Shown: positions 43,911 through 50,406, counted from the whole stretch's first letter. The stretch is DNA of 63,655 nucleotides, filler included, from Octopus bimaculoides (GCF_001194135.2; 6 parts of 6 records of this genome joined end to end with filler, not necessarily neighbours in it); one strand, 5' to 3'. The notes: a model not told the origin generated them from the letters alone. Translations and numbers: made by a program.

Positions 43911-44020
43911 ATCCTGTTCAAAATTATTGGCTTCATTTTAAACACATTCCTTTTTACATTATCCAAAATCACTTTTCTCTATTTATTGTACCTTCACGAG
44001 TACGAATCAAAAGAAACATG
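43911..44020 (+). CDS. chs: Chitin synthase-like gene, N-terminal TM (domain A) exon 1 of 3 seen
   Basis: Acceptor tttttttcag| and donor |gtatgt. Open frame ILFKIIGFILNTFLFTLSKITFLYLLYLHEYESKET-(TG); 110 nt, phase 0 in / phase 2 out, completing a TGG codon with the next exon. Resembles the 'K..K....SK.T.L' first TM region of metazoan chitin synthases (recognised from memory). Confidence 0.75.
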
Positions 44021-44207
44021 GTATGTACATCTATTTCTCTTATGGAACTTCTTTGAAAATCAGTTCATGTTACCTTGTTTGTACAAAAGACTTTATCAAC
44101 TAATCTAATTGGGGACGCATTATATATTTGTCTTATAAAAAAAAAACCAAAAAAAAAACGTTGCCTTGATGGAAGGTTTTTAACAATTTTCCTTTTTCTC
44201 TTTACAG

Positions 44208-44334
44208 GACAGCTGCAATGACATTAGTGCTTGCTGTGCCCGAAATTATTACTTTAGTCAAACTTTTCTGGAGCACGTCTTTTCTCCTCCATGGCAAATT
44301 AAGCGAATGGCCGTCGCTGCCATCTTTTCTATTA
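44208..44334 (+). CDS. chs: Chitin synthase-like gene, N-terminal TM exon 2
   Basis: Acceptor cctttttctctttacag|G and donor |gtatgt. (W)TAAMTLVLAVPEIITLVKLFWSTSFLLHGKLSEWPSLPSFLL; 127 nt, phase 2 in / 0 out. The 'W..A..L...PE......W...F.....WP' pattern is typical of the metazoan CHS A domain. Confidence 0.8.
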
Positions 44335-44513
44335 GTATGTCACAAATTTAATACTTTGTTTTTTTTTCATTCATAATTTCCTCTTTCTCTTTCTCTCTCT
44401 CCCTCCCCCTCTCTCTGTCCCGCTTTCTCCCCGTCTGTCTATTTGTCTCTCTGATTTTTGACTACTTCTTCCATCAGTCTGATTCATGTTATTTCCATTT
44501 TATCTATTTTCAG

Positions 44514-44660
44514 GGTATCGTCTGCTCTATAATGGAAAGCACCGCATTAATATTTTTTCTTATGATAGTCAGTCCCAAACTTCATCCAATTATCCTTATC
44601 CCGTTACTAAGCAGTGTGCTTTGCTTGCAGATAATTTCACTATATTTTAAACAGGGATCG
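44514..44660 (+). CDS. chs: Chitin synthase-like gene, N-terminal TM exon 3
   Basis: Acceptor ttttatctatttttcag| and donor |gtaagt. GIVCSIMESTALIFFLMIVSPKLHPIILIPLLSSVLCLQIISLYFKQGS; 147 nt, phase 0/0, no stops. Matches the 'E..G..L....V.P.L' pattern. Confidence 0.8.
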
Positions 44661-45214
44661 GTAAGTATTTAACTATTTGGAGATATCTCAGTTGTTTAAT
44701 GCGCACTTGTGTGTGTCCGTTCCTTAACATTTATTGATATGCATGTATATAAAAAGCCCAGACTGGATAACGGTTGGAAAATAAACCAACGTACACTGCA
44801 TACATTAACATACATTAACATATCTATTCTATATATCCTTTCCATGGATGTGTATCCATGTTTCTTGTGAAAATATGTGAAGAGTGATATTGTACTGTCC
44901 ATAGAAGCATGATTATATAACGGTATCATGAAGTTCAATGACTATGGTTTATAAGTTATATACACAGACTGTCAAAATATAAACTTTATTCTACATCTGT
45001 ATTGAGTATTCTTTATCCGATTCGTGAAATCTTTTTACATTGCATACATACATACATACATACATACTGACAGACAGACAGAGGAAACAATTCAACAATA
45101 ACTGCCTGCTCACGCGTATATGTTAGCACTCAGATGTATGCATGTATTGTGTGAATGCTTATAAGCCACACCTATACAAATGTGCATATCTCTAGTGAAG
45201 ATATAACGAGGATA

Positions 45215-46330
45215 TCTACACTAGAAGCATGGTATTTGTCTTTGAGCGGTTTATTGAGAGACCAAATTCAATGGTTCCAGACTCCAGAATTATGAGGAGA
45301 GTTTGAGAGTGTGAGACGAGGGTGATGTCATCCGCGAAGTCGAGGCCAGTGAGGTACGATACTGAACGGCATGAGCCTTGTCGGAAATATAGAGTTATGC
45401 CTTGTTCAAATACTGTAGCACGCCGTAATACATGACCCAAGATTATAGTGGAAAGGAAAGGCGCTACGGTGTCCTCTTGGAGTACTCCTGCGAATGTGAC
45501 GGTGTCTCCGTCAGGGGTGCATACGAGACATTTACTGTTCGCATAGATAGAGAAGATAACATTTACGACTTCATTTGGTTTGCTATTAGCAGAAGGAATC
45601 TGAAACATTCACTTACGGTGGACAAAGAAAAATGCTTTGGGGAAATTCACTAAGTCGGTGCACAAAGACTTACGTTTCTTTGCTGAGATGGTTCCAATGA
45701 AACGGCGAAGAGTTAAAATAGGTTTAAGAGTGGAGAGGCCTTTGCGAAAGTTGTTTCGGTTTGATCTGAGTAGTGTTTCGATAGGGTTTCGGATGTAATG
45801 AACATGATACAGTTGAGAAATTTTGCTGAGCATGACACCAGGCTGATGCCATGATACGAGCCATATTCTGGTAGATCTCGCTTCTTCGGAACAGGAATGA
45901 TGCGGTTCAGCTTGAATTTCGATGGAGTTTGAGTGGGGATGTAAGTAGAATTTAGAATAGGAAGAAATGAAATGAAGTAAATCTGGAAGCACACTGCCCA
46001 CGCCACACGATTTGCCAGTCTTAAGCTGTTTAGCGTCAGTTAATGCTTATCTGAGGGTAATCTTACCATTTGGAATATTGGTGAGCAGTGATGGGATTGG
46101 CATCACAACAAAATTGTCTGTGTGGGATGTATTGCTATTGAGTAGCTTTTCAAAGTGGGATTTCCGGACTTCTAGCAGATCTTGCGGGTTATTTGGTTTT
46201 ATATTTTTATAGTTGCTTAGATTTGCCACCAGACAAGTTATTTATAGCTTTCCAGTCTGTGGTGATTTGTCTGCTGCCATCTGCTTCTTTCACAAGGTTA
46301 ATTTGCTCTTCGATGTACGCTTTCTGGTTT
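45215..46330 (-). mobile_element. RTE-like LINE reverse transcriptase fragment, degraded
   Basis: YHGISLVSCSAK, FRKGLSTL..ILTLRR, NF.KAF..VHR, V.TPDGDT..F AGVLQ.DT.APFL, LDFADDITL.S; multiple frameshifts. Confidence 0.85.
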
Positions 46331-48087: not shown

Positions 48088-48545
48088 TTATTTTTCACTT
48101 CTGTTACTTACAGCATCAAGCTTTATGTCTTTTGCAATTATCCATTCGGGTCGCTTCGTGTGTCTGTTCGATTTGCGTATAAAACATTCGATAGTTTCTT
48201 GGGTTCGATGTGTCGTCATTCCAATTAGTTGAATGATGACCGAAATCCCGAACAGAGAGCCATTGATTATGCTAAATACATTTAACTTCGACTTTTCGGT
48301 TGCAACGTTTGTGAAGAGGTATCCAAGGCCGATCATCCAGATCGAATTAAAAATTAAAAATCCGATAACACATTTGAGGCGGAACCTCCGGAGTTTTTCA
48401 GCGATTCCCGAATTTGGTGTACCCGTCCTCACCGTTGAACCAATAACGAAATCTCGTAGAAACTTCCAGAATTTGTATTCGAATTCTTCTTCATGCTTGT
48501 CGAAGAGGCTAAAACTATGAGTGGAAGAATTCATACTTGCGGAAA
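48088..48545 (-). CDS. chs: Chitin synthase, terminal coding exon (C-terminal TM helices)
   Basis: Acceptor ttttcttttatttcag|, phase 1. (I)SASMNSS...EEEFEYKFWKFLRDFVIG...IAEKLRRFRLKCVIGFLIFNSIWM...QLIGMTTHR...SEK* matches the conserved 'E..FW..L', 'L..LR......F...N..W' and 'Q...M..HR' C-terminal CHS patterns. TAA at 48088-48090. Confidence 0.88.
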
Positions 48546-49141
48546 CTGAAATAAAAGAAAATAAATTAATTAATTTTAAAAAATTAAGGTACAGACGTGG
48601 TTGTATGTTTTAGAAATTTGATTTCCAGCTGCATCGTTTCGGGTTCAATCCCACTGCGTGGTACCTTGAATNNNNNNNNNNNNNNNNNNNNNNNNNNNNN
48701 NNNNNNNNNNNNNNNNNNNNNNNNNNNNNNNNNNNNNNNNNNNNNNNNNNNNNNNNNNNNNNNNNNNNNNNNNNNNNNNNNNNNNNNNNNNNNNNNNNNN
48801 NNNNNNNNNNNNNNNNNNNNNNNNNNNNNNNNNNNNNNNNNNNNNNNNNNNNNNNNNNNNNNNNNNNNNNNNNNNNNNNNNNNNNNATTAATTTATTCGA
48901 CTAAGCCTTACAAGGTGGTGCCCCACCATGGCCACAGTCTAAAAGGTAAAAGAAATGTAAGAAAGAAAAATATAACAACTAGAAGAAATGAATTATTTCT
49001 TCTATTGTGAGTTGCAGCCATTGGATTGAAGCAAAGCCAGCGAGAGAGGGAGAGTTTCTTATAGATTCTGTTTGCCTTGTGGCAATATCGTGAAGATGAA
49101 ATGTGAAAGAATAGGAAGGAAGCAAACATGGATTAACTTAC

Positions 49142-49229
49142 TTTTATCCTTCTTTTTCTTCTTTATCTTCTTTTTTCGACGTTTACGGATTTGGGGGAAA
49201 CAAACCAGTTTCGGAACGGAAGCTTTGTT
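49142..49229 (-). CDS. chs: Chitin synthase, 88-nt polybasic linker exon (absent from the ORF track)
   Basis: Acceptor tttatttatttgcag| and donor |gtaagt. NKASVPKLVCFPQIRKRRKKKIKKKKKDK+A, phase 0 in / 1 out, which exactly bridges the phase mismatch between the 50210-50406 and 48088-48545 exons. Confidence 0.85.
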
Positions 49230-49442
49230 CTGCAAATAAATAAATATATAAATAAACAGTAAAGCCCGTTTTCTTTTTATCCTTTACTTCTTTTAATCAT
49301 TCGACTACGGCCATGATGGGGCGTTTTTGAAGGACTTTGTCGAACAGAACAAGTTGGCATTTACACTATCGGTTTTTATGCCGAACAAGTAAGTTACAGG
49401 GACATAACCAAATCTACACCGGTTGTCATCCGATGTTGGGAT

Positions 49443-49478
<36 letters not shown>

Positions 49479-50209
49479 CAGGCTTTCATGAGTTTCCTTC
49501 TTTCAAATTCCCTCACAAGGGATTGATCAGGTGTTACGTGGTTTCAATGAGCTGTTCTAGGGTCAAACGTATTCCAACCGTGACCTCTTAGTCTGTTAAG
49601 CGTCCTCTAATATAAGCATCATTGACATTTTCCCTTACTTCGTTTCTGTTTTATATTTTGAAATGGTAGGATGCAATCTGTAGGGATGTTGGTTACTATT
49701 TCTAGTGGGTTGCTTGACTACGTAGAATCTATCGGTGGCTTGACCTGCATCTCTAGATATTTATTATCAGAGGCGTAAAGGCAGCAAGCAGCTGTATTTA
49801 TAGAGTCTCAGAAATTATGAAACACAATTCTTCAATGCCCAAAGAAAACAATTCTCAAAGTGCATTGTTTTGTATCGAAATCAGACAAGTGGGCGCGGCT
49901 GTTTGGTTTGACACGACGGACTGGAATTTCAGCCTGTTTTTGTGACTGAAACTTTTGTGTGTGTGTATTTTCATTTGTACCTACCACCTCTTGTCAACCG
50001 ATGTTAGTTTCTTTATGTCCCCGTCACTAAGCAGTTCGGCTCAGATAGAATGAATATCAAACTTAAGTAATAGCGTAGAACTGTTCTTATAAAGCTCTTT
50101 TATGGTAGTGCCCCAGCATGGCCACAGTTCAATGACTGAAACAAGTAAAAGATTGAACTCTCAAAACATTTCAACTGCATTGAAAACGATTTGAAATAAA
50201 TATACTCAC

Positions 50210-50406
50210 GCCATCCCTTGTCCCCCAGCTTTGATCAACGATGTTGACCAGGCAGTAAATCGGAAGCAGGACGTGCATGGTTGGAATCATGAACATGTAG
50301 AAAAAACCAAGAAATATAATCCAACTTTCGTGCAGATGTAAAATGGTGGCATAGAAAACACTCCCCACGAGAAACAATAACAAGTATTGATCTCCAAGTT
50401 CTGTTT
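50210..50406 (-). CDS. chs: Chitin synthase, exon with TM helices and SWGTR motif
   Basis: Minus-strand acceptor cctgtcttttgcag| and donor |gtgagt. TELGDQYLLLFLVGSVFYATILHLHESWIIFLGFFYMFMIPTMHVLLPIYCLVNIVDQSWGTRDG contains the LH..E, P....LL..Y...N....SWGTR hallmark of chitin synthases. 197 nt, phase 1 in / 0 out. Confidence 0.92.

What the first reader, a model, noticed from the sequence alone, without database searches (positions are those of the whole stretch)
43911..50406. Two complementary halves of chitin synthase face each other tail-to-tail across a plain 100-N gap
Seen: intact, phase-consistent N-terminal TM exons on + (43911-44660) and the last three exons on - (50406-48088). I found no catalytic GT2 exons (EDR/QRRRW) on either strand anywhere in the window. 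The + gene has no further exons before it collides with the 3' end of the - gene. Between them lies the only exactly-100-N gap without a linker that I found (47684-47783). Inference, three options: (a) one gene, with the block right of the gap mis-oriented or truly inverted; (b) a convergent pair of paralogues, one truncated to a non-catalytic membrane module of about 130+ aa; (c) two antisense-nested CHS genes with very long introns. Options (b) and (c) would be an unusual arrangement for a chitin-building (beak/radula) locus.
Basis: partly seen in the sequence, partly recalled or inferred. Interest (0 to 1): 0.75.

Follow-up and report, generated by a model that had tools for sequence, protein, structure and literature searches.

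The report
Mis-scaffolded octopus chitin synthase gene cluster
The two facing chitin synthase pieces are the start of one gene copy and the end of a neighbouring copy in a tandem cluster of Octopus bimaculoides, brought tail to tail by a Hi-C scaffolding join that most likely flipped a 32 kb block, so the arrangement is probably an assembly artefact.

Summary
The - strand carries the last three exons, with the SWGTR motif.

The piece is Octopus bimaculoides GCA_001194135.2, chromosome CM046609.1. That assembly is a 2015 Illumina shotgun assembly re-scaffolded with Hi-C (HiRise, then Juicebox).

The two parts belong to different paralogues of a tandem cluster. The - gene has its own exons 3-5 and two catalytic exons upstream, in the same shotgun scaffold. 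They lie just outside the piece.

The + gene's intron 4 runs right up to the contig end at 47683. Exon 5 is expected about 0.3-0.8 kb further on.

The exact 100-N gap fits the scaffolding pipeline's default gap. Four such gaps split the 102 kb region into blocks.

The far end of the 32 kb block holding the + exons is collinear, in reverse, with what follows the orthologous 3' flank in gapless O. vulgaris. So the block is inverted. The next block shows the same fault.

An unplaced scaffold, LGKD02068650.1, starts 128 nt before exon 5 of a gene annotated as 5'-partial. It is probably the + gene's missing body.

Verdict: ordinary tandem CHS paralogues plus a scaffolding artefact. A real inversion is not excluded.

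The parts
41514..41525 (+). Coding part of exon 1 of the + CHS paralogue (called G3/N3 here): ATG AAT TTT GAG, then a GT donor. Encodes MNFE.
   Evidence: It matches the MNFE|ILFN start of O. sinensis P0005. The RefSeq 135-aa model spans window 41514-44672.
43911..44020 (+). Exon 2 of the + paralogue (first transmembrane helix).
44208..44334 (+). Exon 3 of the + paralogue (contains the conserved AVPE segment).
44514..44660 (+). Exon 4 of the + paralogue. It ends ...FKQGS, followed by a GT donor.
44661..47683 (+). Intron 4 of the + paralogue, cut off by the contig end. It holds an old reverse-transcriptase relic (45216-46046, - strand). Its last ~38 nt (47646-47683) belong to a dispersed repeat.
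   Evidence: It is collinear with O. vulgaris intron 4: window 44383-46800 and 47305-47645 match L007 21899-24719. Exon 5 starts about 280 nt further on in L007. The homologous spot in paralogue G2 is also an assembly gap. Repeat at the tail.
47684..47783 (.). Exact 100-N gap. It is read as a default-size Hi-C (HiRise/Juicebox) join between two shotgun scaffolds. The sequence is not continuous across it.
   Evidence: Four exact-100 gaps occur among 27 gaps in 102 kb; the others range from 10 to 5368 N. Assembly method and 'default gap of 100 bp': PMC9068888 Supplementary Note 1. Flanks discordant with O. vulgaris.
47784..48087 (-). 3' flank or 3' UTR of the - paralogue (G2).
   Evidence: 92% identical to the 309 nt after the stop codon of the O. 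vulgaris gene, L007 57067-57375.
48088..48545 (-). Last exon of the - paralogue G2 (LOC106883290 model), including the TAA stop at 48088-48090.
48672..48886 (.). Ordinary size-estimated gap inside the last intron of G2. Its flanks are collinear and in frame.
49142..49229 (-). Penultimate exon of G2 (a short, lysine- and arginine-rich stretch).
50210..50406 (-). Third-from-last exon of G2: transmembrane helices plus the SWGTR motif (50230-50216).
   Evidence: Weak Pfam Chitin_synth_2 match. 58-81% identical to homologous exons elsewhere.
50540..51979 (-). Retroelement-tail ORFs inserted in the G2 intron. They are not part of the gene.
   Evidence: Between shared anchors this interval is about 1 kb longer than in O. 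vulgaris.

Best explanation
The window shows a scaffolding junction inside a tandem cluster of at least four chitin synthase (CHS) paralogues. These are of the form that lacks a myosin domain and is about 1150-1250 aa long. The cluster lies on O. bimaculoides chromosome CM046609.1.

The - strand exons are the 3' end of paralogue G2. G2's own exons 3-5 and its first catalytic exons lie upstream in the same shotgun scaffold. Its EDR/QRRRW exon and a transmembrane exon are lost in sized gaps.

The + strand exons are exons 1-4 of a different paralogue, G3. Its contig breaks at a repeat in intron 4, shortly before exon 5.

The short-read assembly fell apart around this near-identical region. Hi-C scaffolding then joined the pieces with default 100-N gaps. 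The 32 kb block carrying the G3 5' end (L009 27266-59351) was most likely inserted in the wrong orientation.

Turned round, the block continues the intergenic sequence after G2, as in O. vulgaris. G3 then points the same way as its neighbours.

The body of G3 (exon 5 to the stop codon) is probably the unplaced scaffold LGKD02068650.1.

Shown: gene identity, two separate paralogues, the contig cut in intron 4, the discordant join, and the inversion relative to O. vulgaris.

Inferred: that the inversion is an artefact rather than real, and that the + exons pair with the unplaced scaffold.
For: Source of the piece
- It is 100% identical to GCA_001194135.2 CM046609.1.
- That assembly is HiRise plus Juicebox scaffolding of the 2015 shotgun assembly, with no gap closing. 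The same note mentions a 'default gap of 100 bp' (PMC9068888 Supplementary Note 1).

Block structure
- In 102 kb (L009) four gaps are exactly 100 N. They delimit blocks of 32, 17 and 21 kb. All other gaps have varied, estimated sizes.

G2 is a separate gene
- G2 carries its own exon 3 (L009 9695-9817), exon 4 (9983-10126), exon 5 (12118-13035) and catalytic exons (15146-18533). No 100-N gap lies between these and the window's three - exons.
- Its exons 3 and 4 are 90% and 94% identical to the window's + exons, so they are separate loci.

The + gene is cut by the assembly
- Window 41250-47645 is collinear with gapless O. vulgaris L007 9742-24719. There, exon 5 follows about 280 nt later.

The block is inverted
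- L007 57067-57375 matches L009 26859-27165 in + orientation.
- L007 62362-62523, 62718-62840, 65283-66193 and 66360-66560 then match L009 59346-59185, 59186-59075, 57344-56471 and 56310-56110, all reversed. The first of these starts 5 nt from the block's far edge.

The same fault next door
- The next block has exons 2-4 and part of exon 5 on the wrong strand. Exon 5 is cut in mid-exon by the block edge. The adjacent block holds a gene body with no 5' end.

Long-read relatives
- Three O. vulgaris copies lie on one strand. The two gene regions mapped in full there (L007, L010) show no inverted 5' fragment.

The unplaced scaffold
- LGKD02068650.1 encodes XP_052834243.1 ('partial', 1027 aa). The model begins at nt 129 with the first codon of exon 5.
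- Its exon 5 differs from the other three copies (89-96% nt identity). That leaves it and the window's 5' end as the only unpaired pieces seen.
Against: - Comparison with O. vulgaris shows the block is inverted relative to that species. It does not show that the inversion is an artefact. A real inversion in the O. bimaculoides lineage with breakpoints in repeats would look the same in this assembly.
- Placing the unplaced scaffold, reversed, into the 100-N gap would also complete the + gene. That needs one edit rather than two, and gives a genuinely convergent pair.
- No overlap joins window 47683 to the start of LGKD02068650.1. In O. vulgaris coordinates about 145 nt lie between them, plus a repeat.
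- Similarity patterns do not single out this pairing. All paralogues are roughly equidistant at 75-96%.
- No transcript evidence was available.
Confidence: 0.77

Rival explanations
1. A real convergent pair of two complete paralogues. The block orientation in the assembly is correct, and the + gene's body (LGKD02068650.1 or an unassembled copy) belongs, reversed, inside the 100-N gap. On this reading O. bimaculoides carries a genuine inversion of one whole CHS unit plus its upstream intergenic DNA, relative to O. vulgaris.
For: - Only one assembly edit is needed: placing an unplaced scaffold into a gap of unknown size.
- All four + exons are intact, with canonical splice sites.
- The reversed synteny of the block's far end is also what a real inversion would give.
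Against: - The inverted segment ends exactly at a default Hi-C join.
- The neighbouring 17 kb block shows the same wrong-strand pattern, with an exon cut by the block edge. That cannot be a clean biological inversion.
- All copies seen in the long-read O. vulgaris assembly, the other O. bimaculoides copy in L005 and the single O. sinensis chromosomal copy read N-terminus to C-terminus on one strand. No convergent partner appears in the mapped regions.
- From my own knowledge, not tested here: blocks of about 20-30 kb are poorly oriented by Hi-C.
Confidence: 0.13
2. A real truncated paralogue. An inversion or partial duplication left a promoter plus four transmembrane exons, giving a product of about 131-135 aa that converges on the 3' end of G2.
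For: - RefSeq annotates a 135-aa product that reads through the last donor to a stop codon (window 41514-44672).
- Exon 5 is absent from the 22 kb (L001) around the + exons.
Against: - Homology to intron 4 of O. vulgaris and of paralogue G2 continues to the last unique base of the contig. No breakpoint is visible.
- The truncation coincides with a contig end at a repeat and with a default scaffolding gap.
- A gene body lacking exactly exons 1-4 sits on an unplaced scaffold.
- dN/dS is uninformative: 0.4-0.6 against other species and about 1 against paralogues, based on very few changes.
Confidence: 0.06
3. One gene split by a mis-oriented right-hand block, so that the + exons and the - exons are the two ends of a single CHS.
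For: Both halves find the same O. vulgaris gene (L007) as their best nucleotide match among the copies sampled.
Against: - The - gene already has its own exons 3-5 and catalytic exons upstream, in the same shotgun scaffold and on the same strand.
- Those exons 3-4 differ from the window's at 6-10% of residues.
- The old RefSeq loci LOC106883289 and LOC106883290 carry consecutive numbers.
Confidence: 0.03

Closest known systems
Lophotrochozoan chitin synthase expansions with tandem paralogues (Zakrzewski et al. 2014, PMC3942024: up to ten paralogues in molluscs; Lottia CS2-4 and CS7-8 tandemly repeated; one ancestral clade without a myosin motor domain)
   Same: - The genes are GT2 chitin synthases with an N-terminal transmembrane block, a catalytic core and a C-terminal transmembrane block carrying SWGTR.
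- Full-length relatives are 1150-1290 aa. They have only CHS/GT2 Pfam domains and no myosin head.
- Several copies lie side by side on one chromosome.
   Different: - I did not build a tree, so assignment to the clade without a myosin domain (group D) is a lead, not a result.
- The octopus copies are 75-96% identical to one another and seem to be homogenised in some exons.
Orientation and placement errors of small scaffolds in Hi-C scaffolded short-read assemblies
   Same: - The inverted 32 kb and 17 kb blocks are each bounded by default 100-N joins.
- Exons and introns are cut at block edges.
- A matching piece was left unplaced.
- The annotation is fragmented or chimeric.
[quoted passage not shown]
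   Different: The raw Hi-C map and the long reads were not available here, so the artefact is inferred from synteny and gene structure, not shown directly.

Membership tests
Chitin synthase (GT2; Pfam Chitin_synth_2 / Chitin_synth_1) | SWGTR (product-translocation) motif after the catalytic core | tested here: met
   DQSWGTRDG is encoded on the - strand, with SWGTR at 50230-50216. A weak Pfam PF03142 match covers profile positions 448-492.
Chitin synthase (GT2; Pfam Chitin_synth_2 / Chitin_synth_1) | Catalytic motifs EDR and QRRRW in the same gene | tested here: inconclusive
   They are absent from the piece. For G2 the exon falls in sized gaps (L001 4594-4946 or 5205-7476). The upstream catalytic exons of G2 are present at L001 2117-2902 and 3714-3881. 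Paralogue proteins P0075, P0076 and P0078 carry GEDRW and QRRRW.
Chitin synthase (GT2; Pfam Chitin_synth_2 / Chitin_synth_1) | Significant full-length homology to curated CHS proteins | tested here: met
   - The window N-terminus is 80% and the C-terminus 71% identical to O. sinensis 'chitin synthase chs-2-like' (1251 aa; Pfam PF01644, PF03142, PF13632).
- Hits continue to gastropod, brachiopod and annelid CHS.
Chitin synthase (GT2; Pfam Chitin_synth_2 / Chitin_synth_1) | N-terminal multi-pass membrane domain | tested here: met
   There are four hydrophobic stretches in the 131 aa encoded by + exons 1-4, by Kyte-Doolittle hydropathy (19-residue window, threshold 1.6). They align to residues 10-137 of full-length P0014.
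Lophotrochozoan CS clade without a myosin motor domain (group D of PMC3942024) | Phylogenetic placement in that clade | not tested
   No tree was built. The only support is indirect: full-length relatives lack a myosin Pfam domain and begin directly with the membrane exons.
   G2 has its own exons 3, 4 and 5 at L009 9695-13035, on the same strand and in the same block as the window's - exons.

The most novel reading that the evidence does not exclude
The 32 kb inversion is real and cuts paralogue G3 in intron 4. That would leave a promoter-bearing fragment of four intact exons. This fragment would encode a four-helix membrane peptide of about 135 aa and be transcribed towards the 3' end of the neighbouring chitin synthase. 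It could act as a decoy subunit or as a source of antisense read-through.
Probability: 0.06. Interest if true: 0.35.

Novelty: not a real feature. Interest (0 to 1): 0.1.

Why it matters
This matters mainly for quality control. This locus in the widely used O. bimaculoides GCA_001194135.2 assembly and its RefSeq annotation is broken into fragment models (135, 209, 210 and 949 aa, and a 1027-aa partial), plus one chimeric model of 1154 aa.

Counts of chitin synthase genes, or claims of odd gene architecture drawn from this assembly, would therefore be wrong. The likely true picture is four or more head-to-tail paralogues. That fits the known expansion of chitin synthases in molluscs and adds nothing unexpected.

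Tried and rejected
- Pfam on single exons gave almost nothing. There was only a weak Chitin_synth_2 hit on the SWGTR exon, and a spurious EED hit caused by a poly-Asn run.
- The second protein search, with G2's own catalytic exons as query, missed proteins that contain them at about 100% identity. The 1154-aa model was recovered only through the cluster listing.
P0002 is not on record.
- Per-exon identities and intron identities did not pair the + and - halves, or the + exons and the unplaced scaffold, with particular O. sinensis or O. vulgaris copies. All copies are roughly equidistant.
- dN/dS on exons 2-4 rests on too few changes to separate a functional 5' end from a relic.
- I looked for overlap or synteny linking the 3' end of the unplaced scaffold to the next block. 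None was found.
- No paper describing this octopus CHS cluster turned up.
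Full report
**What is in the piece**

The usable piece (39530-52820) contains three N runs: 40916-41093 (178), 47684-47783 (100) and 48672-48886 (215).

On the + strand, three exons with AG/GT borders splice into 128 codons in one frame. They lie at 43911-44020, 44208-44334 and 44514-44660. It reads ATG AAT TTT GAG|gt (MNFE) and matches the start of the O. sinensis homologue.

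On the - strand, exons 50406-50210, 49229-49142 and 48545-48088 splice into 246 codons plus TAA. SWGTR is encoded at 50230-50216.

Homology is unambiguous:
- The C-terminal part is 100% identical to O. bimaculoides LOC106883290.
- The N-terminal part is 83% identical to O. sinensis LOC118761567.
- The two parts are 80% and 71% identical to the matching ends of a full-length O. sinensis 'chitin synthase chs-2-like' protein of 1251 aa.

No catalytic exon lies in the piece.

**Where the piece comes from**

The piece is 100% identical to GCA_001194135.2, chromosome CM046609.1. It sits between large N runs.

According to Supplementary Note 1 of PMC9068888, that assembly is the 2015 shotgun assembly re-scaffolded with Hi-C. 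It used HiRise followed by Juicebox curation. [quoted passage not shown] The same note mentions a 'default gap of 100 bp'.

**The two gaps inside the finding**

The 215-N gap is harmless. It lies in the last intron of the - gene. Its flanks are collinear and co-oriented with the gapless O. vulgaris sequence, and the reading frame carries across it.

The 100-N gap is a false or at least discontinuous join. Its left flank corresponds to intron 4 of the O. vulgaris gene (L007 24719, + orientation). Its right flank corresponds to a point 309 nt past that gene's stop codon (L007 57375, inverted).

**The wider region**

Through the cluster listing I recovered the 1154-aa RefSeq model that spans the window, and with it 102 kb of the chromosome (L009).

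Mapping CHS exons on both strands shows four exact-100-N gaps among 27 gaps. They define these blocks:
- **B1** (up to L009 27165) holds paralogue G2 on the + strand of L009, which is the window's - strand. It carries exons 3, 4 and 5, three further exons reaching into the catalytic domain, and then the window's three last exons. Sized gaps lie where the EDR/QRRRW exon and a transmembrane exon should be.
- **B2** (27266-59351, 32 kb) holds the window's + exons at one end. They read out of the block.
- **B3** (59452-76835, 17 kb) holds a second set of exons 2-4 plus the first ~175 codons of exon 5, on the same 'wrong' strand. Exon 5 is cut in mid-exon by the block edge.
- **B4** (76936-98248) holds a gene body on the 'right' strand. 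It starts with the exon after exon 5 and has no 5' end.

Upstream of B1 lies a further complete copy, G1 (LOC106880633), on the same strand as G2.

**Not one gene**

G2's exons 3 and 4 are 90% and 94% identical to the window's + exons. They sit in the same shotgun block as the window's - exons. The + and - exons therefore belong to different paralogues.

**Not visibly truncated**

Window 41250-47645 is collinear with O. vulgaris L007 9742-24719. This includes the reverse-transcriptase relic at 45216-46046, so that relic is an old resident of the intron.

In O. vulgaris, exon 5 starts about 280 nt after the last aligned base. In paralogue G2 it starts about 0.8 kb later, and there an assembly gap occupies the same spot.

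The last 38 nt of the window's contig belong to a dispersed repeat. The + gene is therefore cut by the assembly, not by a breakpoint that can be seen.

**The block is inverted**

G2's 3' flank, up to the last base before the 100-N gap, matches O. vulgaris L007 57067-57375 at 92% identity.

Four single-copy anchors further downstream in O. vulgaris run from L007 62362 to 66560. They match L009 from 59346 down to 56110 in reverse order and orientation. The first anchor starts 5 nt from the far edge of B2.

Turning B2 round makes it collinear with O. vulgaris. It also puts the + exons on the same strand as G1, G2 and G4, about 26 kb after G2's stop codon. Turning B3 round likewise puts its 5' half in front of the body in B4.

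In the long-read O. vulgaris assembly, three copies lie on one strand at 79.53, 79.66 and 79.82 Mb. The two gene regions mapped in full there, L007 and L010, read N-terminus to C-terminus with no inverted 5' fragments.

**Where the rest of the + gene probably is**

The unplaced scaffold LGKD02068650.1 (22,693 bp) encodes XP_052834243.1, annotated 'chitin synthase chs-2-like, partial' (1027 aa). The model starts at nt 129 with the first codon of exon 5 (RILDHDN...) and runs to the stop codon.

Its exon 5 is distinct from those of G1, G2 and B3 (89-96% nt identity). This body and the window's 5' end are therefore the only unpaired pieces seen. Together they tile the O. vulgaris gene, with about 145 nt missing at the junction.

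The pairing is an inference. I put it at roughly 60-65%. No overlap or transcript was available to confirm it.

**Annotation consequences**

The apparent nesting (option c) comes from XP_052826339.1. That model splices G2's 5' and catalytic exons to the 3' exons in B4, 60 kb away. It passes over the window's - exons, which are annotated separately as a 210-aa protein. It also passes over the + exons, which are annotated as a 135-aa protein that reads through the last donor to a stop codon.

**What remains open**

Synteny shows an inversion relative to O. vulgaris. It does not show that the inversion is an artefact.

I favour an artefact (about 0.77) for three reasons:
- Both ends of the inverted segment are default Hi-C joins.
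- The neighbouring block shows the same fault, with an exon cut by the block edge.
- Small blocks are hard to orient with Hi-C. This last point is from my own knowledge and was not tested here.

A real convergent pair, with the unplaced scaffold sitting reversed inside the gap, keeps about 0.13. A real truncated fragment keeps about 0.06. A single split gene keeps about 0.03.

The PacBio HiFi and Iso-Seq assembly of the same species (PMC10925132) would settle this.

**Comparison with what is known**

Tandem chitin synthase paralogues, and expansion to as many as ten copies, are established for molluscs (PMC3942024). These octopus copies lack a myosin domain (Pfam lists). I did not test which clade they belong to.

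Nothing here departs from a normal chitin synthase gene. The odd arrangement is best treated as not a real feature, and interest is low.

Noticed in passing
L009 10001-92440 (spans the whole window piece on its - strand): RefSeq XP_052826339.1 (1154 aa, 'chitin synthase chs-2') is a chimera. It joins the 5' and catalytic exons of paralogue G2 to the EDR-to-stop exons of another paralogue 60 kb away, skipping G2's own last three exons.
   Followed up: yes
L009 59452-76835 and 76936-98248: A second orphan CHS 5' half faces away from a body-only CHS gene in the next block. It has exons 2-4 and part of exon 5, and exon 5 is cut in mid-exon by a 100-N join. This is the same fault as in the window.
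   Followed up: partly
window 45216-46046 (-): A reverse-transcriptase fragment (weak RVT_1 match; the FADD motif is visible) lies inside intron 4. It is shared with O. vulgaris and is 94% identical to the same intron of a paralogue, so it is an old LINE relic carried along by the duplications.
   Followed up: partly
window 50540-51979 (-): Retroelement-tail ORFs with a long AAC/AAT (poly-Asn) run sit in the intron upstream of the SWGTR exon. The interval is about 1 kb longer than between the same anchors in O. vulgaris, so this looks like a lineage-specific insertion.
   Followed up: no
L005 11852-11995 versus L009 9983-10126; window exons 3-4: Exon 4 of paralogues G1 and G2 encodes identical peptides. 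dS between the window's exons 3-4 and theirs is only about 0.03, while the flanking introns are 82-91% identical. This hints at gene conversion among the copies.
   Followed up: partly
L002 (VCDQ01001764.1) and L003 (VCDQ01001854.1), O. sinensis: In the PacBio-based O. sinensis assembly too, one copy's 5' part (exons 1-5) and a gene body sit on separate unplaced contigs. L002 also holds a partial second copy of exon 5 at 24570-24719. The cluster is hard to assemble in general.
   Followed up: no
window 40100-40700, 47130-47250, 49440-49480, 52560-52600: Long (GA)n and (CA)n microsatellites produce the long artificial ORFs in the six-frame listing.
   Followed up: no
L005 10408-10512 (-) versus 10001-10150 (+): The annotated first exon of LOC106880633 (50 aa, unrelated to CHS exon 2) has an inverted partial copy 260 nt downstream. 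The true exon 1 region of that gene appears to be at L005 ~5080-5379, which is 97.7% identical to window 41369-41673. The model's 5' end is therefore probably wrong.
   Followed up: no
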